64,000 nt of DNA from NCBI RefSeq assembly GCF_022045235.1, contig NW_027266280.1, positions 1,488,001 to 1,552,000 on the forward strand, read 5' to 3'. The DNA comes from Haliotis cracherodii (lineage: Eukaryota). The notes below the pieces were generated by a model that saw nothing but the letters and a program-made list of their open reading frames with translations, ran no database searches and was not told the DNA's origin. Positions 8,067 through 62,797 of the stretch are shown here, in pieces. The position numbers and the translations under genes are program-made. Each line of letters starts with the position of its first letter. Positions within the stretch are counted from its first letter, which is position 1.

Positions 8067-8714
8067 TTATTTTGTGCATGGATAGTCGCCACACATCAGG
8101 GTACGGGAAATGCCGCTCGAACTAGACTGACTAAGATTTAACGTCGCTATGCGACGGTTAGCGCACGTGCATCCAACATAGTGAGCGATAGTTTTAGGTT
8201 TGTATTTGTAAAATCCATTTCCACAGCCAATTTCTTCTAAAACTCGGATTTGAGTGGAAACTCTCTCGCACTGCTTTTGGTTATTGTCAACGCATTTCTC
8301 ACACTTACACACGGCCTGGGGGATGGCACTTGGGTAGTGACCGGCGGGGAGACGGGTGACGTTGTAGTACCAGGGACAGAGGGACCTCATCCACAGGGGG
8401 TCCTGAGGGTCGTCACTGACGCTGCTGGGACAGGTGGTACCTCTGTAGTAGTTCTCGCTGTCGAATACCTGGTCCGTGTTCAGTTCTGTGTGGAGGTACG
8501 GCCTTATGCCTTCTCGGACATGGCGGAAGTAGAGCGACGTGTCGGCGTTCTTGTTGAGACTTTGGAAGAGTTGGTTGATATCTTGAGGTGGTTGACAGTT
8601 GGCGGCGTGACGACGTTGACTTATCACGTCGTCCCAGTGTGTGGCCACAGGTAACGCTGACACAAGAGTTTTGTAGACAAGGATTTGCATGAACACCAAA
8701 CGCAGCAACATCAT
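8067..8714 (-). CDS. IL17: Interleukin-17 family cytokine, copy 1 (divergent paralog, single exon)
   Basis: Signal peptide MMLLRLVFMQILVYKTLVSA|LP. IL-17 motifs RSLCPWYY, YPSAIPQAVC, CERVSTQIRVL and YVGCTC. Start placed at ATG 8714 by alignment to paralogs; an in-frame ATG also exists at 8747. Confidence 0.92.
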   Translation of the reverse strand: MMLLRLVFMQILVYKTLVSALPVATHWDDVISQRRHAANCQPPQDINQLFQSLNKNADTSLYFRHVREGIRPYLHTELNTDQVFDSENYYRGTTCPSSVSDDPQDPLWMRSLCPWYYNVTRLPAGHYPSAIPQAVCKCEKCVDNNQKQCERVSTQIRVLEEIGCGNGFYKYKPKTIAHYVGCTCANRRIATLNLSQSSSSGISRTLMCGDYPCTK

Positions 8715-8795
8715 GGAAGAATCGCCGTATTTCGATGTCTGATACATATTGGTGATCAACAAATGCGAACTGTCCTAGTCTATCCAGGCCGCGCT

Positions 8796-8826
8796 CTTAT
8801 ATAACTACTGTATTACAAAATCCCCT
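8796..8826 (-). promoter_or_regulatory. TATA box and kB-like site of IL-17 copy 1
   Basis: Minus strand GGGGATTTTGTAAT...TTATATAAG about 85 bp upstream of ATG 8714. The kB match is imperfect. Confidence 0.55.
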
Positions 8827-9294
8827 TCCACAACAGCATTCCAAAAATAGATGTTTTTTGCGGATGAGTTATCATTCGCGCACGGAGCTGTATCTCGTGA
8901 CTGGAAAACGTTAATTAGGCGCACACAGTTCATCAACATTGCAACACTGAGAGTTTGTTCTTATAGGGTTGTGTTTCCAAACTGTCGTACATGTGGCAAT
9001 AGTGTTGTCTTGGAATACGTTGTCTGCAACATTTTCTGCAATACATTTCTGCAATTATTTTATGATGTGAAAGTTAAAGTATAATGTTATGATTCATTGT
9101 GCAACATTGTAAGACAATTTACAGAAATGCCCATGGCTCTCTTGAATTGAACGAAACATTTTATATCGTACGGGGAACCAACATCCCGGGGTATTTATTT
9201 TAGGGACACTGATATATCTTGATACATATCGTACGGGCATCAATATATCATGGTGAATGTCGTACAGGCACAATATATCAGGATATAATTCTTA

Positions 9295-9810
9295 CGGGTA
9301 CCAATATACCATGGTATACATTGTGTGGGTACTAATATATCATGGTATAAATCGTGTGGGTACCAATATATCATGGTATACATCGTGTGGGTACTAATAT
9401 ATCATGGTATACATCGTGTGGGTACCAATATATCACGGTATACATTGTGTGGGTACCAATATATCATGGTATACATCGTGTGGGTACTAATATATCATGG
9501 TATACATTGTGTGGGTACTAATATATCATGGTATACATCGTGTGGGTACCAATATATCATGGTATACATTGTGTGGGTACCAGTATATCATGGTATACAT
9601 CGTGTGGGTACTAATATATCATGGTATACATTATGTGGGTACTAATATATCATGGTCTACATCGTGTGGGTACCAATATATCACGGAATACATTGTGTGG
9701 GTACCAATATATCACGGTATACATTGTGTGGGTACTAATATATCATGGTATACATTGTGTGGGTACCAGCATATCATGGTATACATCGTGTGGGTACCAA
9801 TGTATCATGA
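9295..9810. repeat. 31-bp minisatellite (ggtatacatYgtgtgggtacYaatatatcat)
   Basis: About 16 tandem units. Source of spurious ORFs 9325-10076. Confidence 0.95.
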
Positions 9811-20001: not shown

Positions 20002-20880
20002 GGTATGTGGTATGTCGTCCATGAAGTAAGTGGTATGTAGTATGTCGTCCATGAAGTATGTGGTATGCAGTATGTCGTCCATGAAGTATGTGGTATGTAG
20101 TATGTCGTCTATGATGTATGTAGTATTTCGTCCCAGAAGTATGTAGTATGTCGTCCATGAAGTATGTAGTATGTTGTGTATGAAGTATGTGGTATGTCGT
20201 CCATGAAGTATGTAGTATTTCGTCCATGAAGTATGTAGTATGTCCTCCATTAAGTATGTAGTATGTCGTGTATGACGTATGTGGTATGGCGTCCATGAAG
20301 TATGTAGAATGTGGTCCATGAAATATGTGGTATGTAGTCTGTCGTCCATGAAGTATGTAGTATATCGTCAATGATGTATGTAGTATGACGTGTATGAAGT
20401 ATGTGGTATGTCGTCCATGAAGTATGTGGTATGTCGTCCATGAAGTATGTAGAATGTCGTCCATGAAGTATGTAGTATGTCGTCCAAGAAGTATGTAGTA
20501 TGTCGTCCATGAAGTATGTAGTATGTCGTCCATGAAGTATGTAGTATGTCGTCCATGAAGTATGTAGAATGTCGTCCATGAAGTGTGTAGTTTGACGTAC
20601 ATGAAGTACGTAGTATGTCGTCCATGAAGTATGTAGACTGTCGCCCATGAAGTATGTAGTATGTCGTCTATGAAGTATGTAGTTTGTCGTCCATGAATTA
20701 TGTAGTATGTCGTCTATGAAGTATGTAGTTTGTCGTCCATGAAGTATGTAGAATGTCGTCCATGAAGTATTTTTTTTCGTCTATGAAGTATGTGGTATGT
20801 CGTCCAAGAAGTATGTAGAATGTCGTCTATGAAGTATGTAGTATGTCGTCAATGAAGTATGTAGTTTGTCATCCTTGAAG
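20002..20880. repeat. ~23-bp minisatellite (gtatgtagtatgtcgtccatgaa)
   Basis: Tandem units. Source of ORFs 19958-20648. Confidence 0.95.
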
Positions 20881-23596: not shown

Positions 23597-23740
23597 NNNN
23601 NNNNNNNNNNNNNNNNNNNNNNNNNNNNNNNNNNNNNNNNNNNNNNNNNNNNNNNNNNNNNNNNNNNNNNNNNNNNNNNNNNNNNNNNNNNNNNNNNNNN
23701 NNNNNNNNNNNNNNNNNNNNNNNNNNNNNNNNNNNNNNNN
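23597..23740. other. Assembly gap (144 N)
   Basis: Run of N, preceded by an ~80-bp tandem duplication at ~23341-23522. Confidence 1.
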
Positions 23741-28926: not shown

Positions 28927-29565
28927 ATGATTTATGAGCTGTGTGTTCTGATCTGCGTAGGGATCCTCTCTGCGTCCGCTCTACCTGTCAACGACGCCTG
29001 GAAACACGTGGTCAGACAACGTCGTAACGCTGCCAACTGTCAACCACCTCAAGATATCAACCAACTCTTCCAAAGTCTCAACGCCAACACCGACACCTCC
29101 ATCTTTCTTCGTTACGCTCAGGGTGCCAGACCGGGGTCATATTTACACAACGAGCTGAACACCGACCAGGTTTTCGACAGTTCCAACCTCGGAGGCATCA
29201 CCTGTCCCAGCAGCGTCAGTGACGACCCTCAGGACCCCCTGTGGATGAGGTCCCTCTGTCCCTGGTACTACAACGTCACCTATCTGCCCGCCGGTCACTA
29301 CCCAAGAGCCATCCCCCAGGCCGTGTGTAAGTGTGACAAATGCGTTGACAATAACCAAAACCAGTGCGAGAGAGTTTCCACTCAAATCCGAGTTTTAGAA
29401 GAAACTGGCTGTGAAAATGGTTTCTTTATCTACAAGCCAAAAATCGTCACCCATTTCGTTGGGTGCACTTGTGCCAAACGCCGGACAACAACAGTAGGCT
29501 CGAACACCGCCCCAACAGCATCAGACAGTGGAAGCAATTGTGGGGACTTTGGATGTGCCTCCTAA
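28927..29565 (+). CDS. IL17: Interleukin-17 family cytokine, copy 2 (212 aa, single exon)
   Basis: Signal peptide MIYELCVLICVGILSASA|LP; motifs RSLCPWYYNVT, YPRAIPQAVC, IRVL and FVGCTC. True ATG at 28927 rather than the TTG at 28903. Confidence 0.95.
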   Translation: MIYELCVLICVGILSASALPVNDAWKHVVRQRRNAANCQPPQDINQLFQSLNANTDTSIFLRYAQGARPGSYLHNELNTDQVFDSSNLGGITCPSSVSDDPQDPLWMRSLCPWYYNVTYLPAGHYPRAIPQAVCKCDKCVDNNQNQCERVSTQIRVLEETGCENGFFIYKPKIVTHFVGCTCAKRRTTTVGSNTAPTASDSGSNCGDFGCAS

Positions 29566-34980: not shown

Positions 34981-35101
34981 GTGCCATCACTTGTTGACAG
35001 ACAGACCACACTCCACCGTCAGGCACAACATCAAGCGTTTGCTGTTCACAGATCATTTCCCACTTCAGTGAAAGTTTAAGTTAAAGTACTCAATTTCCAA
35101 C

Positions 35102-35740
35102 ATGATTTATGAGCTGTGTGTTCTGATCTGCGTAGGGATCCTCTCTGCGTCCGCTCTACCTGTCAACGACGCCTGGAAACACGTGGTCAGACAACGTCGT
35201 AACGCTGCCAACTGTCAACCACCTCAAGATATCAACCAACTCTTCCAAAGTCTCAACGCCAACACCGACACCTCCATCTTTCTTCGTAACGCTCAGGGTG
35301 CCAGACCGGGGTCATATTTACACAGCGAGCTGAACACCGACCAGGTGTTCGACAGTTCCCACCTCGGAGGCATCACCTGTCCCAGCAGCGTCAGTGACGA
35401 CCCTCAGGACCCCCTGTGGATGAGGTCCCTCTGTCCCTGGTACTACAATGTCACCGATCTGCCCGCCGGTCACTACCCAAGTGCCATCCCCCAGGCCGTG
35501 TGTAAGTGTGACAAATGCGTTGACAATAACCAAAACCAGTGCGAGAGAGTTTCCACTCAAATCCGAGTTTTAGAAAAAACTGGCTGTGAAAATGGTTTCT
35601 TTATCTACAAGCCCAAAATCGTCACCCATTTCGTTGGGTGCACTTGTGCCAAACGCCGGACACCAACAGTAGGTTCGAACACCGCCCCAACAGCATCAGA
35701 CAGTGAAAGCAGTTGTGGGGATTATGGATGTGCCCCCTAA
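35102..35740 (+). CDS. IL17: Interleukin-17 family cytokine, copy 3 (212 aa)
   Basis: Intact ORF with signal peptide and all IL-17 cystine-knot motifs. Differs from copy 6 at three residues. Confidence 0.95.
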   Translation: MIYELCVLICVGILSASALPVNDAWKHVVRQRRNAANCQPPQDINQLFQSLNANTDTSIFLRNAQGARPGSYLHSELNTDQVFDSSHLGGITCPSSVSDDPQDPLWMRSLCPWYYNVTDLPAGHYPSAIPQAVCKCDKCVDNNQNQCERVSTQIRVLEKTGCENGFFIYKPKIVTHFVGCTCAKRRTPTVGSNTAPTASDSESSCGDYGCAP

Positions 35741-46697: not shown

Positions 46698-47180
46698 ATG
46701 ATTTATGAGCTGTGTGTTCTGGTGTGCGTAGGGATCCTCTCTGCGTCCGCTCTACCTGTCAACGACGCCTGGAAACACGTGGTCAGACAACGTCGTAACG
46801 CTGCCAACTGTCAACCACCTCAAGATATCAACCAACTCTTCCAAAGTCTCAACGCCAACACCGACACCTCCATCTTTCTTCGTTACGCTCAGGGTGCCAG
46901 ACCGGGGTCATATTTACACAACGAGCTGAACACCGACCAGGTTTTCGACAGTTCCAACCTCGGAGGCATCACCTGTCCCAGCAGCGTCAGTGACGACCCT
47001 CAGGACCCCCTGTGGATGAGGTCCCTCTGTCCCTGGTACTACAACGTCACCGATCTGCCCGCCGGTCACTACCCAAGTGCCATCCAGGACGCGGTGTGTA
47101 GGTGTGTGAGGTGTGTTGACAACGCCAGAGCCAGGTGCGAGAGAGTTTCCACTCAAATCCGAGTTTTAGAAGAAAAGTGA
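46698..47180 (+). pseudogene. IL17: IL-17 copy 4, C-terminally truncated (160 aa) by a LINE tail
   Basis: Homology stops at 47175 after IRVLEE, followed by (GTGA)n. Lacks the terminal VGCTC cysteines. The missing 3' part was not seen elsewhere nearby. Confidence 0.8.
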
Positions 47181-48405
47181 GTGTGAGTGAGTGAGTGAGT
47201 GAGTGAGTGAGTGAGTGCGTTCGTGCGTGCGTGCGTGCGTGCGTGCTGTTCGTGCTTGTGTTCGTGGGTGCGTTCGTTCGTGCGTGCGTTCGTGCGTGCG
47301 TGCGTGCGTTCGTTATGTCACTTCGGCAATATATCAGCCACATATTTTTAATACATATATATAAACTAATAAAATCCTGTCAGCGATGGACATTAGATTA
47401 ATCGATGGATTACTAGAAAATCACAGATAAATATTTAAAACTAGCATACAAGTATAAAATGATATCACTATAAGTAACGGTACAATATAAAAAAGGGCAA
47501 AAGATCGCCAGCAGCATGAGTCATTGCTGAAGGTAGATCACCATGCTCGGGTCCATGGGGACTTACAGTATTTTTGCTCCCTGCATGGACCCCCAGCCGG
47601 ATTTACATCATCACTTCCCTGTTGGCGATTAATGACAAGTTTACACAGTTAAATGAACATATATACTACGATTAAAAAATTGTGGTGAAAAAAAAATTAC
47701 TTTGAATGACGTGGTCTGACAAAACCTCTCTGGGGAACAATCATTTTACACTACTTCAACCCCCATCAAGGTTAACAAGTTTCTCTCTACCAATTCTAAA
47801 ATATTTACTTATTACAAAACATCTAATTCAAAATTTATTTAATAATTCTATTTCTTTTAAAAAAACAATAATTAAATGAGAACTTACCTGATACAAAAGA
47901 TCCTTGAGCAATGAAATAGTCATCCCTTGTGATGGAAAAATCAATACAGTCAAGCAGGACATGCTTGACTGTGATTCTTTCATCACAAAGGATGCAGAAT
48001 GGTGGATCCTCACATTTTAACAAATATTCATATGTATATCGAGAATGGCCAATACGACATTGTCTTAATACGACTTCTTCAAATCTGGACTGACGACCCA
48101 AGTAGGTATAACCAATATTTGTTTTTATTGCATGTAATTTATTTATAGCCACTTGGGTGTCCAACTTCTTCTGCATGAGATCTCTGATGTAACATCTAAG
48201 GACAGGTATATAATCAGTGTAGGGCATAAGAAGTGGTGTCACAGATTGGTTGAGTGCTGCCTTAGTAGCAGCATCAGCCATTGTGTTACCAACGATCCCA
48301 ACATGGCAACAGAAGCAACAAAAGACGATGTCGTGATGGCCAGTTGCAAGATGATTGTGTAATTCAATTATTTCTAGTAAATCTGGATGCTGACATGACA
48401 TATTT
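47176..48405 (-). mobile_element. 5'-truncated I/Nimb-like LINE (RNase H C-terminus, CCHC finger, 3' UTR, (CACT)n tail)
   Basis: ORF 47835-48401 contains HVGIVGNTMADAATKAAL, RIGHSRYT and CILCDERITVKHVLLDC. A microsatellite tail abuts IL-17 copy 4. Confidence 0.85.
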
Positions 48406-50782: not shown

Positions 50783-52533
50783 TGGGTGGGTCAGTAGGTC
50801 AGTGTACGCGTCAGAGGTCTTCTAACATCAACACTAGGTCCGGTTTTGAAGCCTGATTCATGCAGAAGACTGACAATATTCACTTATTCGATACAGGCGA
50901 AGCTTGCATCTGACAAAGTATAATTTTCTGAAAAAGGCTGAATGCGCTCTGCAAGCAGATGGAATACAGGCCTGGTCCGTACGTGGAATCAGTCACATGT
51001 TCCTAAAAGGGCTTTGACTAAAACTGATGTACATGATTACAGATCGAGAGTTGCCTCCCTTAGCTGGCAGTATCCGCTGTTCGTTGGTTCGAATTTAGAA
51101 AAGTAGGGAAACTAATAATACCAGCACTTTTATCGATGGCTGGGCAGTGCATAGATCTTTTGGATTTGGTGACTTTAGATACTGATGGAAAGACAATCAA
51201 CTCCAGTTGCATGTTATACAATTTGGTTACACTGTGTGATGAAATAAAGACGTTGTAACACTTTTGATACAATGTATACGTTTTTGAAACAGCGACGTCA
51301 TCACAGTGCGGCACTGTGCGTATGCAGGCTGACTGACGTCCAGGCACTATGAGGGTTAAGACCGACATATTCCAGCTATATGACCGTGGTCTATAAATAA
51401 TCAAATCTGGACCAGATAATCCAGTGACTGACATCATGAGCATCGATCTACGTAACTGGGATACGATGACATGCATTAGTAAAGTCAGTGAACCTGACCA
51501 CCCGATCCCGTCAGTGGCTTCTTACGACACGAATATTTGCAAGCATGGGTTTATGAAGATGGAAAAGACATTCGCGCCAACAGGCAGGGGTAATTCACTT
51601 TCATCCGAAGGTGTACCAGTTCCAACCCGGAACTTCACGGGTATGTTCTTCCTAACATAAATAGAGATGGGGTTACTTGTATGATGGCGACTTCACATCT
51701 ATTACGCATTTAGTGATGAAATAATAAAATTTGTAAATATATAATCTATACTTAACTCACGCGAAAAAAACATGTTTATTTATATATATTTGTCATATAA
51801 CAGAAATTTCAGCACGGTTACAAACTGACCAAATTTAAGCCTTGGCTGTAACATATAGCTGTCATACTTAGCGAGACAGAACAACCGCTGCATGAACAAC
51901 CGCTGCATGAAGAACGCCGAGGCACATGTAGGTCAGCTTGGACGTTAGAGATGTGCTTACGTTAAACAGAGATCCGGGTTCGAATCCTGACTCATTCTGG
52001 CTATTGACGTTATATATATCGCAGCTGCTTGTATTCACAATAGGTTTTCTATTAGCTTGTAAGGTACATCTCGTAATTAAGTGAAAATTTATCGGTCTGA
52101 ATGGGGTATTCATGCTAAACTGAGGCATAGTATTCCAGTGGTCTAGCACTATAACATCAGCACTAGTCCGTACTGGTATAAATAATCTGGAAAGCGACGT
52201 TAACACTTTTATCTCACCTCATCTACATATAAAAATGAGGAAGTTTGAGGAAGTGTATAGACCCCCCCCACCCCCCACCCCACCCCCACCCCCCCCCCCA
52301 CCCCACCCCACCCCTATAGGGTGTACAAAGTATGTGTATATGTATATATATGGTGTACAGAGTATGTGTATGTGTTTACATAGGGTGTACAAAGTATGTG
52401 TATGTGGTTATTTAGGGTGTACAGAGTATATGTATATGTGTATATAGGGTGTGCAGAGTATTTGTATGTGTTTATATAGGGTTACAGGGTATGTGTATAT
52501 GTGTATATAGTGTGTACAGAGTATGTGTATATG

Positions 52534-52928
52534 TCAGCTTACATCACATCTAACGTCAACTAACATCACATCCACTGTCAGTTGACATCACATCTACCGT
52601 CAGTTGACATCACATCTACTTTCAGCTAACATCACATCTACTGTCAGCTAACATCACATCTACCGTCAGTTGACATCACATCCACCGTCAGCTGACATCA
52701 CATCTACCGTCAGCTGACATCACATCTACCGTCAGTTGACATCACATCTACCGTCAGTTGACATCACATCTACTGTCAGCTAACATCACATCTACTGTCA
52801 GCTAACATCACATCTACCGTCAGTTGACATCACATGCACCGTCAGCTGACATCACATCTACCGTCAGCTGACATCACATCTACCGTCAGTTGACATCACA
52901 TCTACCGTCAGCTGACATATCATCTACC
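52534..52928. repeat. 22-bp minisatellite, second array
   Basis: Same unit as 40811-42212. Confidence 0.93.
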
Positions 52929-53166
52929 CAAGCAGGAGAGAGAAAGCCTTCTGTTTCACTTTTCAGGCCAGCTGACTTATCCAAGCGAAGGACTCTTTGG
53001 CCACGTCAGCCAGCATTGCAGTAATAGTAACCGGATTTGTTGGTGTATATAAATGTATCACAAGTAACTGACAGATAGACCACTTCAATCAAACATCAAG
53101 CGTTTGCTTAACATCTGTGCAATTTCTACTAAAGTGTGCATTCTGTTTCACCAACTTTTTTCCATC

Positions 53167-53538
53167 ATGATTTATGAGCTGTGTGTTCTGATGTGCGTAG
53201 GGATCCTCTCTGCGTCCGCTCTACCTGTCAACGACACTTGGAAACACGTGGTCAGACAACGTCGTAACGCTGCCAACTGTCAACCACCTCAAGATATCAA
53301 CCAACTCTTCCAAAGTCTCAACGCCAACACCGACACCTCCATCTTTCTTCGTAACGCTCAGGGTGCCAGACCGGGGTCATATTTACACAACGAGCTGAAC
53401 ACCGACCAGGTGTTCGACAGTTCCCACCTCGGAGGCATCACCTGTCCCAGCAGCGTCAGTGACGACCCTCAGGACCCCCTGTGGTCTTCACGTATCGTAC
53501 CCAGGTGGGGAATCGAACCTAAAGTATTAGATACGTAA
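53167..53538 (+). pseudogene. IL17: IL-17 copy 5, truncated after DPLW by a junction into a SINE fragment
   Basis: ATG at 53167. Homology ends at 53484, then cttcacgtatcgtacccaggtggggaatcgaacc (antisense SINE A). The whole cystine-knot core is lost. Confidence 0.88.
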
Positions 53539-53687
53539 TGTCCTTCCATCACGAGCCAGTTGTGAGGTACTACAGTTTCTTTTGTCACTTTGAATAAATG
53601 TTGATTTCTAGACGAAAGCCTTCCTACTTCGTTCATGTTCAGTAGAAGATATGAGAGTACCCATTCATTACTCGGACTTTATGTGAT

Positions 53688-53812
53688 TGAATGATTGATA
53701 GGATTTGATTAATTGATAAGATTTGATTGATTGATAGGACTTGACTGATTGATAGAACTTGACTGATTGATAGGACTTGATTGACTGATTGATAAGACTT
53801 GATTGATAAGAC

Positions 53813-53843
<31 letters not shown>
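53688..53843. repeat. (GATT)n-derived low-complexity repeat
   Basis: Direct reading. Confidence 0.85.
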
Positions 53844-53844
<1 letters not shown>

Positions 53845-53935
53845 AATGTTTTTGATACGGGTATCACAACTGTGTTTGGACATTAAAGTTGGAATGTCTC
53901 GGCGACTGTTTACAGACGAGCAACTTTTTGTAATA

Positions 53936-54730
53936 CTTCATTGTGTGACCCAACAACGCCATAGAAGAAGCACTATCTAATTGCACAGTAGCCAGCCTGT
54001 CCACGATTTGACCCAACAACGTTATAGAGGAACTACTATCAGTAGCCAGCCACCTTCATTGTGGGACAGAGCAACGCTATAGAGGAACTACTATCAAATA
54101 GCACAGTAGCCAGCCCCCTTCATTGTGGGGCCCTACAACGCTATAGAACAACCACTATATAATAGCACAGTAGCCAGCCCCCTTCATTGTGTGACCAAAC
54201 AACACTATAGAACAACCACTATATAATAGCACAGTAGCCAGCCCCCTTCATTGTGTGACCAAACAACACTATAGAACAACCACTATATAATAGCACAGTA
54301 GCCAGCCCCCTTCATTGTTGGACAGAACAATGCTATAGAACAACCACTATATAATAGCACAGTAGCCAGCCCCCTTCATTGTGTGACCAAACAACACTAT
54401 AGAACAACCACTATATAATAGCACAGTAGCCAGCCCCCTTCATTGTTGGACAGAACAATGCTATAGAACAACCACTATATAATAGCACAGTAGCCAGCCC
54501 CCTTCATTGTTGGACAGAACAATGCTATAGAACAACCACTATACAATAGCACAGTAGCCAGCCCCCTTCATTGTGTGACCAAACAACACTATAGAACAAC
54601 CACTATATAATAGCACAGTAGCCAGCCCCCTTCATTGTTGGACAGAACGATGCTATAGAACAACCACTATATAATAGCACAGTAGCCAGTCCCCTTCATT
54701 GTTGGACAGAACGATGCTATAGAACAACCT
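53936..54730. repeat. 64-bp minisatellite, array 3
   Basis: Same family as arrays 1 and 2. Confidence 0.93.
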
Positions 54731-55706
54731 CTGGGTGGGTCAGTAGGTCAGTGTACGCGTCAGAGGTCTTCTTACATCAACACTAGGTCCGGTTTTGAAG
54801 CCTGATTCATGCAGAAGACTGACAATATTCACTTATTCGATACAGGCGAAGCTTGCATCTGACAAAGTATAATTTTCTGAAAAAGGCTGAATGCGCTCTG
54901 CAAGCTGATGGAAAACAGGCCTTGTCCGTATGTGGAATCAGTCACATGTTCCCAAAAGGGCTCTGACTAAAACTGGTCTTCATGATTACAGATCGAGAGT
55001 TGCCTCCCTTAGCTGGCAGTATCCGCTGTTCGTTGGTTCGAATCCAAGATTCGCCCAGAAATATCCTCCCTGGTCTGTCAGCACCAGACCCAGGCTCGTA
55101 CAGTACACAGTTACAACCTGCGTCACTCACACGAGAAAATCAACAACCAATCACATGATCGGCCAAAAGGCACGGATATTTGTTTCCGGGTGCTTAATTG
55201 TGAGGGCACTTCGTTATAACACTTGTCAGAAAATATCTGATGAAATGTTGTCAAATACAAAGATAGGAAAATATGGAGGATAATCCGAAACTACATCACT
55301 ATACGTACATGTACATCCTCAACAAACATAAAATATGACTACAACAATCAGCGTTATAACGAAGTACACATGTGCACTTCAAGACGAGCGTGTCAGTTTC
55401 ATTCAGAATACGGATTTCTTAACATAGTCAGCAAACACAAATGCTTATATGTACAGAGGGTTGATGTTTTTGTGACTTCGTTAATGAATATTCCCAATAC
55501 TGATCGTCATTGACAAATTCCTCCATCCGTCCACGCGTTCGTGGGTTTCTAATCAACTTTCCATGGGATTATTTGAGATGATGGTCTTGCTACAAAGTAT
55601 CTTCATGCCTGGGCAACCAAGAGGAACAATAACGGAAATACATCAGTGAGTAGCTACCTCATCCCACATGTTACGCTGAAAGTGCGACAAATGTATATTT
55701 AGCCGA

Positions 55707-55740
55707 GGGACACCCCACCGGATTTGTTAGTGTATATAAT
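55707..55740 (+). promoter_or_regulatory. kB + ETS-like + TATA core promoter of copy 6 (mirror 62919-62952 on minus for copy 7)
   Basis: GGGACACCCC-ACCGGATTT-...-TATATAAT, identical to copy 3. Confidence 0.72.
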
Positions 55741-55861
55741 GTGCCATCACTTGTTGACAGACAGACCACACTCCACCGTCAGGCAAAACATCAAACGTTT
55801 GCTGTTCACAGATCATTTCCCACTTCAGTGAAAGTTTAAGTTAAAGTACTCGATTTCCAAC

Positions 55862-56500
55862 ATGATTTATGAGCTGTGTGTTCTGATCTGCGTAGGGATC
55901 CTCTCTGCGTCCGCTCTTCCTGTCAACGACGCCTGGAAACACGTGGTCAGACAACGTCGTAACGCTGCCAACTGTCAACCACCTCAAGATATCAACCAAC
56001 TCTTCCAAAGTCTCAACGCCAACACCGACACCTCCATCTTTCTTCGTAACGCTCAGGGTGCCAGACCGGGGTCATATTTACACAGCGAGCTGAACACCGA
56101 CCAGGTGTTCGACAGTTCCCACCTCGGAGGCATCACCTGTCCCAGCAGCGTCAGTGACGACCCTCAGGACCCCCTGTGGATGAGGTCCCTCTGTCCCTGG
56201 TACTACAACGTCACCGATCTGCCCGCCGGTCACTACCCAAGTGCCATCCCCCAGGCCGTGTGTAAGTGTGACAAATGCGTTGACAATAACCAAAACCAGT
56301 GCGAGAGAGTTTCCACTCAAATCCGAGTTTTAGAAGAAACTGGCTGTGAAAATGGTTTCTTTATCTACAAGCCCAAAATCGTCACCCATTTCGTTGGGTG
56401 CACTTGTGCCAAACGCCGCACACCAAAAGTAGGTTCGAACACCGCCCCAACAGCATCAGACAGTGAAAACAGTTGTGGGGATTATGGATGTGCCCCCTAA
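55862..56500 (+). CDS. IL17: Interleukin-17 family cytokine, copy 6 (212 aa)
   Basis: Intact ORF with signal peptide and IL-17 motifs. Confidence 0.95.
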   Translation: MIYELCVLICVGILSASALPVNDAWKHVVRQRRNAANCQPPQDINQLFQSLNANTDTSIFLRNAQGARPGSYLHSELNTDQVFDSSHLGGITCPSSVSDDPQDPLWMRSLCPWYYNVTDLPAGHYPSAIPQAVCKCDKCVDNNQNQCERVSTQIRVLEETGCENGFFIYKPKIVTHFVGCTCAKRRTPKVGSNTAPTASDSENSCGDYGCAP

Positions 56501-57203
56501 ACGAGAGACTCGTAGACGATGTCGCCAATTGATGGTGTCATTTTCCAATGGACTTTTTCCAGTGAGGAAATACCGTGTTAGTCAGTGTCTGACAACTATC
56601 CCGTTTAGGTAGAAAGGTTTTCTACAAAAGCTGCATTTCCGTCCATGTATGGAATGCCTTATTTCTTCATACATCACCACGACATTAATTCAGTCCATTT
56701 CATTTATTTATTGTATGTCTTAATTTATTAGAAATGTGTGTATTTTGAATATTTACAATTATGCATTTATTGCAATGTGTTTATTGTGATATTTATTGTT
56801 TACAACGCATCAAGTTGAATGTTGAACTAATATCACCACACATTAATTAAATCCATTTCTATTTACATATTCATAAATTATTGTGTATGTTATACTTATT
56901 GTGAATGTGTGGATTTCTACAGTGATGCATTTATTGCATTATTATTATGATATTATATTGTTTTTACAACGCATCAGCTTAAAACTTGGACCGATGTCTG
57001 TATGAATGTTTGTTTATTGCTCAAACACATGTTCATTCCATTCACCCAATTTATATACGTTTAGGTTGTTATTTTTATTGTTGACATGTTGAATAAATAT
57101 TGTTTTCTAAGAGAGAGTTTTTCCTTCTCCGCCACTGTCCGGTAGAGGATCCAAGAATTCTGTTAGTATATAGGAGACTTCCATCAGCCACTAACCACAT
57201 ACA

Positions 57204-57421
57204 AATATACCATTGCCAAGTCGATGTCTTTCCAAACTGACGCCATTTTTATTTATGTGACGTCACATACTCGACGCGTCACTACAGATAGCAGTAGAGC
57301 ATCGTACATGTCAATATACCATTGCCAAGTCGATGTCTTTCCAAACTGACGCCATTTTTATTTATGTGACGTCACATTCTCGACGCGTCACTACAGATAG
57401 CAGTAGAGCATCGTACATGTC
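57204..57421. repeat. 109-bp tandem duplication containing a TGACGTCA palindrome
   Basis: Units 57204-57312 and 57313-57421. tatgtgacgtcacata at 57254-57269. Confidence 0.85.
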
Positions 57422-58078
57422 TCACAGGAAGGATGTACGGGTTGTTAATATATAAATATAATGGGTTGGTTTTTCGGCAGGATAAAGCCAACGGATAAAA
57501 ACGATATCGGTTGGGGTCATATGCAAATATCACAGAGCAAGTAGGGACTACTTTCAGTGTTGATAAACAAACATGGCGTCGCCCTTGTCATTCGGCAATC
57601 GACTCAGAATTAACCGTCGGCAATCTGGAGACACTACTGGGATAATTGCTATCATTGTCAAGGGAATAGTCTAATATACTGAATAACAGTGTCTAACTGT
57701 GACGTAGCTTAGACATTTTGTGTTTTGGCTGCTTTGGAGATATAAATTGCGAACACAATTTAACGAGGACACGAGCCAAGCGGGATCAGTCTCAATATCT
57801 GTTCTTGTAGACCTCTACGACTTAGAACCTTTTCCCAATTTAACCAAAAAGCTGGATTTGGCCGAAATATGTTCGAATTGTCTGTACATCTGACTTTGAA
57901 CATTGTAACGTTATGACAGGACAAGCAGACTCGTAACAAACGTGACGTCTCATAGACCAGGGTTAGAATATTTTCCCTTTGATAAAGGACAGTTATCCTT
58001 GCGGGCGGGCCAATGGATTGCCGCGAAAGGCAAGTAGAAACAACATATGTAGGCAATTGTTACTTTGCCTGTGTATAG

Positions 58079-58183
58079 GTTAGACCACGAGGACCCAGTG
58101 TCTAATCGTTGAAATGGTTATTTAAACCACCTGGTTTAATCAACCATTTCAACGATTAGACACTGGGGTCCGAGTGGTCTAAC
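58079..58183. mobile_element. 105-bp hairpin/MITE-like element (mirror 60476-60580)
   Basis: gttagaccac...ttaaacc-acct-ggtttaa...gtggtctaac, ~50-bp arms with a 4-nt loop. Confidence 0.75.
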
Positions 58184-58707
58184 ATATTTAAACCATATCC
58201 AACATTTATGGCACCTAAAATTCTTAAGAAACATTGTTTTGTTTAAGATATTTTGAAGATATTCAGGAACTCTATGCTCAGCTGTGAGAACACTGTGTGA
58301 GTCGGCCCTGCGTGAAGCACGTGAAATGTGTTCCCCGAGCCTTTTGCACGTGCCACTCGCACTTTGCCGATTTGGGTTATGAAATGCATGTCACGGGGCA
58401 GGTATACCATTCATTTTGGACCAACTCGAGCACATTTATCAATCAACTAAATAGTACTTGCCCATGTTGATGGGCCTATTATGAGTAAATGTAGCCCTGA
58501 TCAAGATAATAGTAAATTTTTTTCTATCTGTTCGTTTCGTTGAACGAAAAGCTACAAAATCACAAGTACTGTACAAATACTAGAATGCATAGAGTAACAT
58601 ATTGTATAAAAGTTGCATAAAACACATATCGCAATTCATAAAGGAATAAGCAATTGGTACTGATGTAAGTAAATATCTAGTTGTTAATTTCATACCCTAT
58701 CTCCCAT

Positions 58708-58779
58708 GTCGCCGTGGCAGAAGACTACATTCGTTAGCCTTCAGTGCGGACTTCTCGGGTTCGAATCCCGCTGGTGACA
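58708..58779 (+). other. tRNA-like element / pseudo-tRNA (mirror 59880-59951 minus)
   Basis: 7-bp acceptor stem GTCGCCG/TGGTGAC, T-arm CGGG-TTCGAAT-CCCG and downstream TTTTT. D and anticodon arms pair poorly. Confidence 0.45.
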
Positions 58780-59020
58780 AACGTTTTTCATAAAATTGTT
58801 CTATCATCAAGACAAAAGATAGAGGAAAAAAGAAGTTCCGTCATTGCCAAGTGGTGTTCAACTAACAATTCAGTTAGTTAAACCTCGGTCAAAGACAAAG
58901 CAGCCATTGTTCAAATATTGTTACGCCACTGTCTGAGAAACACGTTTCAGTTGGAACAATATTGACTGTTATAACTGTCCGACTAAAGAATAACCGACCT
59001 TGTGACGTACTCTATACATG

Positions 59021-59117
59021 TATTAGCGAGTCTGACCACCCGATCCCGTTAGTCGACAAGCAGGGTCGCCTTTTACATGTGTTGCTGAACACCTATTCAA
59101 ACCCGGATCTTCACGGG
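59021..59117 (-). mobile_element. SINE family B fragment at the inner palindrome junction
   Basis: agcgagtctgaccacccgatcccgttagtcg...cccggatcttcacggg. Confidence 0.8.
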
Positions 59118-62100
59118 TTGAAAACGCAGATTGTTTTATTGTGAAGTAAAACATACTCCAATGCATTTTTTCAGTGAACAGTTGAACCTTTTTTATATAA
59201 ATGTACGCGAAAGATTTCATAATATTCTATAAATAACAAGAACTACCGCAATGTTTTATAACAACAAAACTCCACCGACAAATCCATGAATTTCAATAAC
59301 TGTGAGTCATACAAGTGTCTGTTCACCCTTCAAGTAATCACACTGAGATTCTGTCAGCGGTCCGAAGACAAATGGAGAACCTCACCCAAATGTATTTTGA
59401 CATCAACAAAAGCCGATAAATACAGGTTGTCTCGCGAGTGCGTTTTGGGATGGTAAAAATCCTGTATTAGTAAAAAAACAGTGTATTTAGCGAGCCTTGG
59501 GCTAATACAGGATATTTACCATCCCAAAACACACAAGGGTGATAATGTCTTTCCTAAATTCTGTGAGCGAAAAATGTTCTCATCTCCCACAAACATTACC
59601 TAACCATTGCAAGTTTTCCTGGAATATGCGCATTAATACATGTATAGAGTACGTCACAAGGTCGGTTATTCTTTAGTCGGACAGTTATAACAGTCAATAT
59701 TGTTCCAACTGAAACGTGTTTCTCAGACAGTGGCGTAACAATATTTGAACAATGGCTGCTTTGTCTTTGACCGAGGTTTAACTAACTGAATTGTTAGTTG
59801 AACACCACTTGGCAATGACGGAACTTCTTTTTTCCTCTATCTTTTGTCTTGATGATAGAACAATTTTATGAAAAACGTTTGTCACCAGCGGGATTCGAAC
59901 CCGAGAAGTCCGCACTGAAGGCTAACGAATGTAGTCTTCTGCCACGGCGACATGGGAGATAGGGTATGAAATTAACAACTAGATATTTACTTACATCAGT
60001 ACCAATTGCTTATTCCTTTATGAATTGCGATATGTGTTTTATGCAACTTTTATACAATATGTTACTCTATGCATTCTAGTATTTGTACAGTACTTGTGAT
60101 TTTGTAGCTTTTCGTTCAACGAAACGAACAGATAGAAAAAAATTTACTATTATCTTGATCAGGGCTACATTTACTCATAATAGGCCCATCAACATGGGCA
60201 AGTACTATTTAGTTGATTGATAAATGTGCTCGAGTTGGTCCAAAATGAATGGTATACCTGCCCCGTGACATGCATTTCATAACCCAAATCGGCAAAGTGC
60301 GAGTGGCACGTGCAAAAGGCTCGGGGAACACATTTCACGTGCTTCACGCAGGGCCGACTCACACAGTGTTCTCACAGCTGAGCATAGAGTTCCTGAATAT
60401 CTTCAAAATATCTTAAACAAAACAATGTTTCTTAAGAATTTTAGGTGCCATAAATGTTGGATATGGTTTAAATATGTTAGACCACTCGGACCCCAGTGTC
60501 TAATCGTTGAAATGGTTGATTAAACCAGGTGGTTTAAATAACCATTTCAACGATTAGACACTGGGTCCTCGTGGTCTAACCTATACACAGGCAAAGTAAC
60601 AATTGCCTACATATGTTGTTTCTACTTGCCTTTCGCGGCAATCCATTGGCCCGCCCGCAAGGATAACTGTCCTTTATCAAAGGGAAAATATTCTAACCCT
60701 GGTCTATGAGACGTCACGTTTGTTACGAGTCTGCTTGTCCTGTCATAACGTTACAATGTTCAAAGTCAGATGTACAGACAATTCGAACATATTTCGGCCA
60801 AATCCAGCTTTTTGGTTAAATTGGGAAAAGGTTCTAAGTCGTAGAGGTCTACAAGAACAGATATTGAGACTGATCCCGCTTGGCTCGTGTCCTCGTTAAA
60901 TTGTGTTCGCAATTTATATCTCCAAAGCAGCCAAAACACAAAATGTCTAAGCTACGTCACAGTTAGACACTGTTATTCAGTATATTAGACTATTCCCTTG
61001 ACAATGATAGCAATTATCCCAGTAGTGTCTCCAGATTGCCGACGGTTAATTCTGAGTCGATTGCCGAATGACAAGGGCGACGCCATGTTTGTTTATCAAC
61101 ACTGAAAGTAGTCCCTACTTGCTCTGTGATATTTGCATATGACCCCAACCGATATCGTTTTTATCCGTTGGCTTTATCCTGCCGAAAAACCAACCCATTA
61201 TATTTATATATTAACAACCCGTACATCCTTCCTGTGAGACATGTACGATGCTCTACTGCTATCTGTAGTGACGCGTCGAGAATGTGACGTCACATAAATA
61301 AAAATGGCGTCAGTTTGGAAAGACATCGACTTGGCAATGGTATATTGACATGTACGATGCTCTACTGCTATCTGTAGTGACGCGTCGAGTATGTGACGTC
61401 ACATAAATAAAAATGGCGTCAGTTTGGAAAGACATCGACTTGGCAATGGTATATTTGTATGTGGTTAGTGGCTGATGGAAGTCTCCTATATACTAACAGA
61501 ATTCTTGGATCCTCTACCGGACAGTGGCGGAGAAGGAAAAACTCTCTCTTAGAAAACAATATTTATTCAACATGTCAACAATAAAAATAACAACCTAAAC
61601 GTATATAAATTGGGTGAATGGAATGAACATGTGTTTGAGCAATAAACAAACATTCATACAGACATCGGTCCAAGTTTTAAGCTGATGCGTTGTAAAAACA
61701 ATATAATATCATAATAATAATGCAATAAATGCATCACTGTAGAAATCCACACATTCACAATAAGTATAACATACACAATAATTTATGAATATGTAAATAG
61801 AAATGGATTTAATTAATGTGTGGTGATATTAGTTCAACATTCAACTTGATGCGTTGTAAACAATAAATATCACAATAAACACATTGCAATAAATGCATAA
61901 TTGTAAATATTCAAAATACACACATTTCTAATAAATTAAGACATACAATAAATAAATGAAATGGACTGAATTAATGTCGTGGTGATGTATGAAGAAATAA
62001 GGCATTCCATACATGGACGGAAATGCAGCTTTTGTAGAAAACCTTTCTACCTAAACGGGATAGTTGTCAGACACTGACTAACACGGTATTTCCTCACTGG

Positions 62101-62158
62101 AAAAAGTCCATTGGAAAATGACACCATCAATTGGCGACATCGTCTACGAGTCTCTCGT

Positions 62159-62797
62159 TTAGGGGGCACATCCATAATCCCCACAACTGTTTTCACTGTC
62201 TGATGCTGTTGGGGCGGTGTTCGAACCTACTTTTGGTGTGCGGCGTTTGGCACAAGTGCACCCAACGAAATGGGTGACGATTTTGGGCTTGTAGATAAAG
62301 AAACCATTTTCACAGCCAGTTTCTTCTAAAACTCGGATTTGAGTGGAAACTCTCTCGCACTGGTTTTGGTTATTGTCAACGCATTTGTCACACTTACACA
62401 CGGCCTGGGGGATGGCACTTGGGTAGTGACCGGCGGGCAGATCGGTGACGTTGTAGTACCAGGGACAGAGGGACCTCATCCACAGGGGGTCCTGAGGGTC
62501 GTCACTGACGCTGCTGGGACAGGTGATGCCTCCGAGGTGGGAACTGTCGAACACCTGGTCGGTGTTCAGCTCGCTGTGTAAATATGACCCCGGTCTGGCA
62601 CCCTGAGCGTTACGAAGAAAGATGGAGGTGTCGGTGTTGGCGTTGAGACTTTGGAAGAGTTGGTTGATATCTTGAGGTGGTTGACAGTTGGCAGCGTTAC
62701 GACGTTGTCTGACCACGTGTTTCCAGGCGTCGTTGACAGGAAGAGCGGACGCAGAGAGGATCCCTACGCAGATCAGAACACACAGCTCATAAATCAT
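62159..62797 (-). CDS. IL17: Interleukin-17 family cytokine, copy 7 (protein identical to copy 6)
   Basis: Mirror of 55862-56500 in the palindrome. Confidence 0.92.
   Translation of the reverse strand: MIYELCVLICVGILSASALPVNDAWKHVVRQRRNAANCQPPQDINQLFQSLNANTDTSIFLRNAQGARPGSYLHSELNTDQVFDSSHLGGITCPSSVSDDPQDPLWMRSLCPWYYNVTDLPAGHYPSAIPQAVCKCDKCVDNNQNQCERVSTQIRVLEETGCENGFFIYKPKIVTHFVGCTCAKRRTPKVGSNTAPTASDSENSCGDYGCAP

What the first reader, a model, noticed from the sequence alone, without database searches (positions are those of the whole stretch)
8067..62797. Seven-copy single-exon IL-17 cluster undergoing birth-and-death evolution
Seen: five intact and two truncated IL-17 genes within 55 kb, in both orientations. 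Each intact copy has an uninterrupted CDS, and all have a TATA box ~85-130 bp before the ATG, so they are probably intronless. Known: IL-17 expansions occur in oysters, mussels, cephalopods and sea urchins. Inference: a lineage-specific, still-turning-over immediate-early cytokine array with probable copy-number variation between individuals.
Basis: partly seen in the sequence, partly recalled or inferred. Interest (0 to 1): 0.75.

Follow-up and report, generated by a model that had tools for sequence, protein, structure and literature searches.

The report
Abalone IL-17 cytokine gene array
This is a real cluster of interleukin-17-like immune signalling genes in an abalone genome, part of a much larger array, whose copies are duplicated, broken and copy-corrected against each other; the genes are already annotated publicly, so it is a solid but fairly ordinary case.

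Summary
The window carries seven IL-17-like ORFs, five intact and two truncated. Six of the seven pass Pfam PF06083. Each has a TATA element 92-129 bp upstream of the ATG. The N gap lies in intergenic DNA and touches no gene.

The genome is a Haliotis (abalone), by protein matches. The seven genes are a small part of a ~436-kb IL-17 array on contig C17. The genome has at least 44 IL17-domain matches.

Copies c6 and c7 sit in the arms of a ~7.9-kb palindrome whose inner 4.37 kb differ by one base. Independent short-read contigs bridge one spacer junction only.

"Birth-and-death" is only half the story. Similarity between some paralogs is confined almost exactly to the CDS, and c1 is a mosaic, which points to gene conversion. 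The subfamily is also multi-copy in three other Haliotis species.

RNA-like contigs from two sister species lie collinear on the gene, supporting a single-exon CDS. Copy-number variation and immediate-early induction remain untested. Public annotation already holds these proteins: a new member of a known kind.

The parts
8067..8714 (-). c1: intact, divergent IL-17 paralog (215 aa). It has old orthologues in other Haliotis species and carries two tracts of about 95-98% identity to c6
   Evidence: PF06083 E 9.8e-12; dS 0.56-0.84 against the others, dN/dS about 0.3
28927..29565 (+). c2: intact IL-17 gene (212 aa)
35102..35740 (+). c3: intact IL-17 gene (212 aa). Its unit 33151-36405 is about 93% identical to the c6 unit
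46698..47180 (+). c4: truncated copy (160 aa). Homology ends at about 47175-47186 in a (GTGA)n/(GTGC)n microsatellite. It has a divergent 51-nt patch
   Evidence: (partial domain, 26 bits)
53167..53538 (+). c5: truncated copy, 97% identical to the 5' part of c4. Homology ends at about 53484 and tRNA-like/SINE-like sequence follows
   Evidence: (no domain)
55862..56500 (+). c6: intact IL-17 gene in the left palindrome arm. RNA-like contigs from two sister species lie collinear on it
62159..62797 (-). c7: intact IL-17 gene in the right palindrome arm, protein identical to c6
51092..59025 (+). Left palindrome arm, containing c5, a 64-bp minisatellite and c6
59026..59633 (.). Palindrome spacer (608 bp), partly high-copy repeat sequence, with an internal hairpin at 59438-59534
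59634..64000 (-). Right palindrome arm. It continues beyond the window to about 67951 and contains c7 and a mirror copy of c5
   Evidence: the X1 contig 59508-59800 bridges this junction with 0 differences
55707..55739 (+). c6 core promoter: kB-like GGGACACCCCAC (55707-55718) and GTGTATATAA (55730-55739). The same pair lies at 28791-28823 (c2), 34947-34979 (c3) and 62920-62952(-) (c7). c4 and c5 have the TATA only (46581-46590, 53043-53052)
   Evidence: (4 hits against 0.51 expected)
56501..57097 (+). c6 3'UTR, with 9 ATTTA motifs and an AATAAA at 57092-57097. RNA-like contig cover ends at 56985-57064
23597..23740 (.). Assembly gap, intergenic
47835..48401 (-). Tail of the long ORF of a high-copy element (inferred non-LTR retrotransposon), about 650 bp beyond the c4 break
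   Evidence: 6972 first-look candidates; many frames of about 1230 aa

Best explanation
The window holds part of a large tandem array of single-exon genes for secreted IL-17-family cystine-knot cytokines in an abalone (Haliotis) genome.

Protein. Each intact gene encodes a hydrophobic signal peptide, a short N-terminal segment ending in R-Q-R-R, an N-terminal extension, and an IL-17 domain. The domain has the invertebrate-type third knot disulfide. A short tail with two more cysteines follows.

Regulation. The genes have a compact promoter with a kB-like element about 12 bp upstream of a TATA box. They have an AU-rich 3'UTR.

Inferred function. The proteins are inducible pro-inflammatory or mucosal-defence cytokines. 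They would act as dimers on SEFIR-domain IL-17 receptors, which this genome encodes, and so feed back on Rel/NF-kB.

Evolution. Three processes act together. (1) Segmental duplication of a two-gene unit, plus formation of a ~7.9-kb palindrome. (2) Gene conversion, which keeps the coding sequences of otherwise diverged paralogs nearly identical. (3) Decay by truncation and frameshift.

Shown here: family membership, fold, anatomy, array size, palindrome structure, conversion footprints, and collinear RNA-like contigs in sister species.

Inferred: secretion, receptor use, kB control, inducibility, mRNA instability.
For: Family and fold:
- PF06083 is over the cut-off in 6 of 7 copies.
- A profile of 26 paralogs and orthologues hits human IL-17A, IL-17F and IL-25 chains at E about 1e-13. 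The four canonical Cys align, and Cys stands at the two positions that are Ser in human IL-17A/F. The abstract of PMC4517768 describes this as the invertebrate state.
- The AF2 core has pLDDT 87-94. All listed top Foldseek PDB matches are IL-17A, IL-17F or IL-25, with probability 1.00.

Protein anatomy:
- The N-terminus is hydrophobic, with KD 1.8-2.9 over residues 1-21.

Pathway partners in this genome:
- 10 SEFIR matches and 2 Rel-homology genes.

Promoter and 3'UTR:
- TATA at -92 to -129 in 9 of 9 subfamily copies. A kB-like site in c2, c3, c6, c7 and c8.
- The 12-mer is found 4 times in 64 kb, all at promoters, against 0.51 expected. It is kept in c8 although that promoter is otherwise 30-55% identical.
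- ATTTA enrichment: c6 has 9, reached by 10 of 2000 shuffles; c2 has 6, reached by 51 of 2000.

Transcription:
- RNA-like contigs of two other species cover 55498/55617 to 56985/57064 collinearly. Depth is 0 at 57164-57310, where the DNA runs do have cover.

Array size:
- 44 PF06083 matches: 21 on C17 between 1.12 and 1.56 Mb, and 13 on C3 between 0.59 and 0.72 Mb.

Gene conversion:
- dS among c2-c8 is 0.014-0.10, while the flanks cannot be aligned. Sliding-window identity shows sharp tract boundaries.

Sharing with other species:
-.
Against: - No RNA run of the same species held the gene. X23 and X24 have next to none of its words.
- The RNA evidence is cross-species. It comes from contigs guessed to be RNA, which cannot show transcript ends.
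- One X16 contig starts 116 bp upstream of the TATA, so the TATA may not mark the only start site.
- ATTTA enrichment is not significant for c1, c3 and c8.
- The kB assignment rests on a recalled consensus. It is absent from c1, c4 and c5.
- dN/dS among the young copies (0.27-1.0) rests on 3-26 changes and says little.
- Grouping of copies by species in the tree has only moderate support (88/78, 89/95) on very short branches.
- The left spacer junction of the palindrome was not bridged by any listed contig.
Confidence: 0.8

Rival explanations
1. Pure birth-and-death. Near-identical copies are simply very young duplicates, older ones drift apart or die, and there is no sequence exchange between paralogs.
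For: Truncated and frameshifted copies exist. The c3 and c6 units are similar over about 3.2 kb including flanks, and the palindrome arms over 7.9 kb. Both are true segmental duplications.
Against: c6 and c8 are 95-100% identical only from ATG to stop, with promoter and 3' flank at 30-55%. c6 and c2 show CDS 96-100% against 5' flank 55-70%. c1 has two 95-98% tracts inside a 45-65% background. dS of 0.04-0.07 cannot be reconciled with flanks that do not align.
Confidence: 0.1
2. The c6/c7 palindrome (with c5 and its mirror) is an assembly artefact, either a fold-back or two haplotypes joined head to head. On that reading the window really holds six copies.
For: The inner 4367 bp differ by one base. 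The outer differences (0.65% substitutions and VNTR length changes) look like allelic differences. The left junction 59025/59026 lies in a very high-copy repeat and is not bridged by any listed contig.
Against: There is no N gap at the junctions. The spacer is 608 bp of ordinary sequence. A 308-nt contig of run X1 crosses the spacer/right-arm junction with 0 differences, and X5 reaches 25 nt into the spacer. The arms have different outer contexts. Mean word depth of unique arm contigs is about 2.5-3.3 times that of the spacer contig in two runs from different studies: X1 14-23 against 7.8, X5 49-87 against 19.9. The tool warns that such depths are not copy numbers, so this is only a hint.
Confidence: 0.2
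3. The genes are not primarily immune cytokines. They would be hormone-like or neuro-endocrine IL-17-domain signals, in the manner of crustacean CFSH, made from a processed precursor.
For: A conserved R-x-R-R site follows the signal peptide in 25 of 46 paralog ORFs. The neighbouring paralog has nine 13-residue propeptide-like repeats bounded by RR or GK. PMC10418988 (passages) states that CFSH carries an IL-17 domain in its mature peptide.
Against: The promoter has a kB-like site and the 3'UTR is AU-rich, as in cytokine genes. Molluscan IL-17 expansions are linked to immune response in PMC8353272 (passages). A paper on an H. rufescens IL-17 under Vibrio challenge is cited in the reference list of PMC11087794; its title only was seen, the paper itself was not read.
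Confidence: 0.12
4. Most copies are haplotigs or collapsed/expanded assembly duplicates rather than paralogs.
For: Abalone genomes are heterozygous (general knowledge). c6 and c7 are identical.
Against: c1-c5 differ from each other by 3-14% in DNA. They have different flanks, repeats and breakpoints, and lie in tandem on one gap-free stretch. Sister species also have 4-6 distinct proteins of this subfamily.
Confidence: 0.03

Closest known systems
Expanded tandem IL-17 arrays of marine bivalves, octopus and sea urchin (Saco et al. 2021, PMC8353272; Huang et al. 2015, PMC4517768; passages read)
   Same: PF06083 domain. Many paralogs in tandem on one scaffold. Invertebrate-type extra knot cysteines. 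Variable, often low, intron number. Homologues found only in close relatives.
   Different: The host is a gastropod. PMC8353272 reports that the gastropods it studied (Biomphalaria 8, Aplysia 4) lack expansion, whereas this genome has at least 44 domain matches. The CDS here is single-exon, whereas two exons is the commonest form in mussel. Gene-conversion tracts and a gene-bearing palindrome are documented here. I did not find either described for IL-17 in the library. The supplementary tables of PMC8353272, which hold gene structures, could not be seen.
RefSeq 'interleukin 17-like protein' models of Haliotis rufescens, H. rubra and H. asinina
   Same: 87-98% identical 212-aa proteins. Several distinct copies per species on one contig. 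The window's own c1, c2, c3, c4 and c6/c7, and c8 beyond the window, are present in the public protein sets as exact sequences.
   Different: Those are bare gene models. The array architecture, palindrome, conversion and pseudogene structure are not part of the annotation.
Human IL-17A, IL-17F and IL-25 (PDB 8dyf, 5n92, 7uwk and others)
   Same: Cystine-knot fold (Foldseek probability 1.00, TM to target up to 0.71). Four canonical Cys align, as do the 'PW' and 'VGCTC' motifs.
   Different: About 22-27% identity. Human IL-17A/F has Ser at the two positions that are Cys here. Vertebrate genes mostly have two introns (PMC4517768). There is an extra N-terminal extension, an RQRR site and a C-terminal CGDYGC tail.
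Crustacean female sex hormone (CFSH)
   Same: An IL-17 domain lies in the mature part of a larger precursor (PMC10418988 passages). A precursor-related peptide and a dibasic cleavage site are recalled only; I found no passage on them.
   Different: CFSH is an arthropod eyestalk hormone. No sequence comparison was made here. The promoter and UTR features here look cytokine-like.
Gene-bearing palindromes with arm-to-arm gene conversion, such as primate sex-chromosome ampliconic palindromes (recalled knowledge)
   Same: Inverted arms with a unique spacer, about 99.98% arm identity, and genes carried in the arms.
   Different: The arms are far smaller (7.9 kb). The setting is an invertebrate immune-gene array on an unassigned contig. 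Reality in the genome is only partly verified.

Membership tests
IL-17 cytokine family (Pfam PF06083) | Profile match above the curated gathering score | tested here: met
   6 of 7 window copies score 26-46 bits against a cut-off of 24. c5 is cut before the domain.
IL-17 cytokine family (Pfam PF06083) | Four canonical cystine-knot cysteines (C-x-...-C and C-x-C in strands 2 and 4) | tested here: met
   C134, C139, C180 and C182 of c6 align to the Cys of human IL-17A/F. They are invariant or at least 90% conserved in 26 sequences.
IL-17 cytokine family (Pfam PF06083) | Invertebrate state: a third knot disulfide where vertebrates have two Ser | tested here: met
   C111 ('CPW') and C147 ('QCERV') align to Ser in human chains. 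The feature is described in the abstract of PMC4517768.
IL-17 cytokine family (Pfam PF06083) | IL-17 fold | tested here: met
   AF2 model with mean pLDDT 74 and core 87-94. All listed top Foldseek PDB hits are IL-17A, IL-17F or IL-25.
IL-17 cytokine family (Pfam PF06083) | Secreted: N-terminal signal peptide | tested here: inconclusive
   Hydrophobic stretch at residues 1-21 by the Kyte-Doolittle scale, followed by SASA/LP, and a model helix at 2-16. No signal-peptide predictor was available.
IL-17 cytokine family (Pfam PF06083) | Signals as a dimer through SEFIR-domain IL-17 receptors | not testable with these tools
   The genome has 10 SEFIR (PF08357) matches. Binding was not tested.
Birth-and-death multigene family | New copies arise by duplication and some copies become pseudogenes | tested here: met
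   Segmental duplicates and a palindrome. c4, c5 and the mirror of c5 are truncated, and c8 is frameshifted.
Birth-and-death multigene family | Paralogs evolve independently: they group by orthologue across species and show no conversion | tested here: not met
   c1 groups with H. rubra and H. asinina orthologues (97/96). The core copies group by species instead: own c3/c6/c7/c8 at 88/78, H. asinina x4 at 100/97. The conversion tracts have sharp boundaries.
Intronless (single-exon) gene | Transcript collinear with genomic DNA | tested here: met
   Contigs of X15 and X16 (guessed RNA, sister species) tile 55498/55617-56985/57064 without a GT..AG joint. The only shared joint (56677>56799) has CA..TG ends. 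An intron further 5' is not excluded. No RNA of the same species was available.
Immediate-early gene | Rapid induction without new protein synthesis | not testable with these tools
   Only promoter and UTR motifs are available.
Genomic palindrome | Inverted arms around a spacer, present in the organism and not only in the assembly | tested here: inconclusive
   The structure is in the assembly. The right junction is bridged by an X1 contig. The left junction is not bridged in any listed piece. Word depth of the arms is about 2.5-3.3 times that of the spacer, which is only a hint.

The most novel reading that the evidence does not exclude
The array encodes pro-cytokines rather than plain IL-17s. 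A conserved R-x-R-R site, about 10-15 residues after the signal peptide and directly before the first conserved Cys, would be cut by a furin-type convertase. That would release a short conserved propeptide together with the mature IL-17.

In the paralog just left of the window this propeptide has been amplified to nine dibasic-flanked 13-residue units. One gene would then yield a cytokine plus a set of small peptides. This would link IL-17s to their furin-processed cystine-knot relatives and to CFSH-type precursors.

Gene conversion and the palindrome would serve to keep several identical, kB-driven copies for high-dose, rapid output.
Probability: 0.3. Interest if true: 0.6.

Novelty: new member of a known kind. 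Interest (0 to 1): 0.35.

Why it matters
IL-17 expansions are a hallmark of bivalve, cephalopod and echinoderm innate immunity. The comparative survey I read (PMC8353272, passages) found no expansion in the gastropods it sampled, and linked expansion to filter feeding.

An abalone with at least 44 IL-17-domain loci in two large arrays is a counter-example. It shifts that ecological explanation towards marine life in general, or towards lineage history.

The array is also a compact natural example of duplication, CDS-limited gene conversion, palindrome formation and decay acting together on an immune gene family. This matters for anyone using paralog-specific SNPs, read depth or trees to study these genes. 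Conversion will mislead orthology calls and dating.

For abalone aquaculture and conservation, the intact kB/TATA-driven copies are candidate markers of inflammatory response.

Tried and rejected
- Single-sequence phmmer of c6 against PDB gave 0 hits at E<=1. A 26-sequence profile was needed.
- Pfam gave nothing for ORF 47835-48401. Its nature as the tail of a high-copy element with frames of about 1230 aa came from a genome-wide search. "Non-LTR retrotransposon" is my inference.
- Retrocopy origin of the intronless genes was considered and rejected. The copies share upstream TATA and kB promoters. No A-run follows the AATAAA (sequence).
- The haplotig explanation for c1-c5 was rejected.
- Is the furin-type site general to IL-17s? 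Only 10 of 149 representative relatives carry R-x-[KR]-R within 8 residues before a Cys N-terminal to the knot. A shuffle control that was not matched for position gave 7 of 149. The feature therefore belongs to a subset. All 10 real cases sit at the homologous place.
- I looked for a statement on CFSH precursor cleavage in PMC11087794 and PMC10418988 and found none. That point stays recalled.
- Searches for abalone IL-17 expansion, intronless molluscan IL-17, furin processing and gene conversion returned no paper on these points. The library lacks most subscription journals, and the supplements are closed.
- The left palindrome junction could not be checked. It lies in a repeat with word depth of about 2e5, and only the longest pieces are listed.
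- A recount gives 21 and 13.
- The gap was checked, not first.

Full report
OBSERVATION

- Intact: c1 8067-8714(-), c2 28927-29565(+), c3 35102-35740(+), c6 55862-56500(+), c7 62159-62797(-).
- Truncated: c4 46698-47180(+) and c5 53167-53538(+).

Pfam IL17 (PF06083) is passed by 6 of 7 copies. c5 ends before the domain. The copies are 55-71% identical to c1 and much closer among themselves. c6 and c7 encode the same protein.

A TATA[AT]A[AT] element lies 92-129 bp upstream of every ATG. The exact 10-mer GTGTATATAA occurs six times in the window, each time upstream of one of c2-c7.

THE GAP

The only N run, 23597-23740, lies in intergenic sequence. A 79-bp tandem repeat is on its left and AT-rich DNA on its right. 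It is 14.8 kb from c1 and 5.2 kb from c2. No IL-17 similarity lies between 17984 and 28927. It breaks no frame. What depends on it is only the linkage, spacing and relative orientation of c1 against the other six.

WHOSE GENOME, AND HOW BIG IS THE ARRAY

The nearest named proteins are "interleukin 17-like protein" of Haliotis rufescens (98%) and H. rubra (87%). The exact protein of a neighbouring copy is listed under a Haliotis species name, on a contig of the same length as C17. So this is an abalone genome.

The window is G000:C17:1488001-1552000. A six-frame search with PF06083 finds 44 matches above the curated cut-off, which is a lower bound:
- 21 on C17 between 1.12 and 1.56 Mb
- 13 on C3 between 0.59 and 0.72 Mb
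- 3 elsewhere on C3
- 2 on C1 and 2 on C7
- one each on C5, C56 and C34

The window's subfamily itself has nine loci. The two extra ones lie just right of the window. One is a mirror copy of c5 at about 65190-65528(-). The other is c8 at about 69440-70024(-).

Most C17 members are complete single ORFs that start with a hydrophobic leader. Many C3 members are not, and probably have an upstream exon.

A genome-wide tree shows the same pattern of identical or near-identical neighbours in other parts of the C17 array. Three copies with a 5.3-kb period are 99.1-99.7% identical over the 3.2-kb loci compared.

WHAT THE PROTEINS ARE

A profile of 26 paralogs and orthologues (A2) hits human IL-17A, IL-17F and IL-25 chains at E about 1e-13. 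The alignment places C134, C139, C180 and C182 of c6 on the four canonical cysteines. It places C111 ("CPW") and C147 on the two positions that are serine in human IL-17A/F. The abstract of PMC4517768 (passages) describes this as the invertebrate state.

The AlphaFold2 model has a confident beta core, with pLDDT 87-94 over residues 91-180. Every listed top Foldseek match in the PDB is IL-17A, IL-17F or IL-25, with probability 1.00.

Residues 1-21 are hydrophobic, and R-Q-R-R follows at residues 30-33.

The genome encodes 10 SEFIR-domain matches and two Rel-homology genes, so the canonical partners exist. Secretion, dimerisation and receptor use are inferred.

GENE ANATOMY AND EXPRESSION

Upstream of c2, c3, c6, c7 and c8, a GGGRNNYYCC element lies 12 bp before the TATA motif. 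I recall this as the Rel/NF-kB consensus. The 12-mer GGGRNNYYCCAC occurs four times in the window, all at these promoters, against 0.51 expected. It survives in c8 although that promoter is otherwise at background similarity, which is a phylogenetic footprint. c1, c4 and c5 lack it.

The 600 nt after the stop are AT-rich and carry ATTTA motifs:
- c6 has 9, reached by 10 of 2000 shuffles.
- c2 has 6, reached by 51 of 2000.
- c3 has 6, reached by 172 of 2000.
- c1 and c8 are not enriched.

An AATAAA lies at 57092.

In my one read-laying run I used two runs guessed to be RNA, from two other species (X15, X16). Their total contig size is transcriptome-like. They tile 55498/55617 to 56985/57064 collinearly, at 0-3 differences in the CDS pieces. 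Their depth falls to zero at 57164-57310, where both DNA runs have cover. No joint with GT..AG ends lies in the gene. This supports a single-exon CDS and UTRs.

There are caveats. The evidence is cross-species and comes from contigs, so ends and levels are not shown. One X16 contig begins 116 bp upstream of the TATA. Two RNA-like runs of the same species hold next to none of the words, which fits low basal expression but proves nothing.

HOW THE ARRAY EVOLVES

(a) Duplication. c3 and c6 sit in units that are about 93% identical over about 3.2 kb. Each unit runs from a 64-bp minisatellite through the gene to its 3' flank.

Comparison of longer stretches shows a two-gene unit. Its order is: minisatellite, a "gene X" (the c3/c6/c7/c8 type, with the kB-like site), a 32-bp repeat, a 22-bp repeat, then a "gene Y" (the c4/c5 type, without the kB-like site). 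All three gene-Y copies are truncated.

(b) Palindrome. 51092-59025 and 67951-59634 are inverted copies around a 608-bp spacer.
- The inner 4367 bp differ at one base (55297).
- Further out the arms differ mainly in tandem-repeat length.
- The outer 1.8 kb differ by 12 substitutions and 4 gaps.

Contigs from two DNA runs of different studies match the arm with no differences. One X1 contig bridges the spacer/right-arm junction (59508-59800). X5 reaches 25 nt into the spacer. The left junction lies in a very high-copy repeat and is not bridged in the listed pieces.

Mean word depth of arm contigs is about 2.5-3.3 times that of the spacer contig. The tool warns against reading depth as copy number. 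I take the palindrome as probably real (about 0.8), not proven.

(c) Gene conversion. Among c2-c8, dS is 0.014-0.10, while the flanks mostly fail to align. Sliding windows show the following:
- c6/c8 are 95-100% identical from the ATG to the stop and 30-55% outside.
- c6/c2 are 96-100% in the CDS, 55-70% upstream and 75-90% downstream.
- c6/c1 show two tracts of 95-98% (about +90 to +150 and +270 to +470) in a 45-65% background.

This is concerted evolution, not just recent birth.

It also explains the protein tree. c1 groups with H. rubra and H. asinina orthologues (97/96). The core copies group by species: this genome's c3/c6/c7/c8 at 88/78, and four H. asinina copies at 100/97. Sister species carry 4-6 distinct proteins of the subfamily, so the multi-copy state is genus-wide.

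(d) Decay.
- c4 loses homology at about 47175 in a (GTGA)n/(GTGC)n microsatellite. The tail of a high-copy element with frames of about 1230 aa lies about 650 bp beyond.
- c5 loses homology at about 53484 and continues into tRNA-like sequence.
- c8 has a one-base gap near codon 187 that shifts the frame and removes the C-terminal cysteine pair.

dN/dS against c1 is about 0.3, which indicates purifying selection. Among the young copies there are too few changes to say.

COMPARISON WITH WHAT IS KNOWN

Tandem IL-17 expansions are described for mussel, oyster, scallop, octopus and sea urchin (PMC8353272 and PMC4517768, passages). PMC8353272 states that the gastropods it studied (Biomphalaria 8, Aplysia 4) lack expansion, and relates expansion to marine filter feeding. 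An abalone with at least 44 domain loci is a counter-example.

I found no paper in the library on an abalone IL-17 array, on its intron state, on conversion among IL-17 paralogs, or on furin processing of invertebrate IL-17. Subscription journals and supplements were not visible.

[quoted passage not shown] The paper itself was not seen.

The window's own proteins (c1, c2, c3, c4, c6/c7), and c8 beyond the window, already exist as exact sequences in public protein sets. The genes themselves are therefore known. What is added here is the architecture and the mode of evolution.

VERDICT

This is a real feature and a secure IL-17 family member. The array is far larger than seven copies. It is shared across Haliotis. 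It is shaped as much by gene conversion as by birth and death.

Copy-number variation and immediate-early behaviour are untested. Novelty: a new member of a known kind. Interest is moderate to low (0.35).

The boldest reading still open is that these are furin-processed pro-IL-17s. The neighbouring paralog has amplified the propeptide nine-fold.

Noticed in passing
G000:C17:1486714-1487589(-), that is 411-1286 bp left of the window start (L014/L033): A 291-aa IL-17 paralog. Between the signal peptide and the first conserved Cys it has nine tandem 13-residue units of the type DSLMDFGNAMTRR. Each ends in RR or GK, like a multi-copy peptide precursor fused to an IL-17 domain.
   Followed up: partly
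window c2-c7, residues 30-33 (e.g. 55949-55960); paralogs across C17 and C3:28.18 Mb: An R-x-R-R furin-type motif (RQRR, RARR, RVRR, RLRR, RERR) lies about 10-15 residues after the signal peptide and 4-5 residues before the first conserved Cys. It is present in 25 of 46 IL-17 ORFs of this genome. c1 has SQRR. Outside the genus only 10 of 149 representative relatives show it, all at the homologous position.
   Followed up: partly
window 47085-47135 (c4): The divergent patch of c4 (…AVCRCVRCVDNARARC…) shares its R/A states with a separate orthologue group of H. rubra and H. asinina (P0006, P0005). That group has no intact counterpart in this genome. c4/c5 may be the remnant of that lineage, with its 5' part overwritten by conversion.
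   Followed up: partly
window 57458-57751, 58928-59221, 59369-59662: Very high-copy repeats, with summed contig word depth up to about 2e5 in the DNA runs. One of them straddles the inner end of the palindrome arm and the spacer. Its first 30 bases recur at several other places in the window. A repeat may have mediated palindrome formation.
   Followed up: no
window 59438-59534: A 33-bp inverted repeat (94% complementary) inside the palindrome spacer. A related sequence lies at 26885-26959.
   Followed up: no
window 47835-48401(-): A 188-aa ORF with no Pfam hit. It is the C-terminal end of an element with 6972 first-look candidates in the genome, many with open frames of about 1230 aa. It is probably the tail of a non-LTR retrotransposon ORF2.
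   Followed up: partly
window 43947-44525(-): An ORF with weak helix-turn-helix and Tc3-transposase-type matches, all below the Pfam cut-offs except HTH_28. It lies in the extra DNA that separates c3 from c4.
   Followed up: no
window 9271-9809, 10756-12169, 12917-14947, 20033-20880, 31038-32106, 33178-33901, 40276-42212, 42792-43423, 48854-50780, 52315-52928, 54040-54729: Minisatellites of 22-64 bp units fill a large share of the intergenic DNA. They create the long spurious ORFs. The 64-bp array keeps its place about 1.1-1.9 kb upstream of c3 and c6, and it differs in length between the palindrome arms.
   Followed up: partly
G000:C3:28181277-28181870(-) and 28190065-28190658(+) (L011, L010): A second inverted pair of IL-17 genes (197 aa). 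They are 99.1% identical over only 804 bp (promoter plus CDS), with little similarity beyond. This is another likely conversion or micro-duplication case.
   Followed up: partly
window 55617-55925: A contig of the RNA-like run X16 begins 116 bp upstream of the TATA box of c6. Possible explanations are an upstream start site, read-through, or DNA in that run.
   Followed up: no
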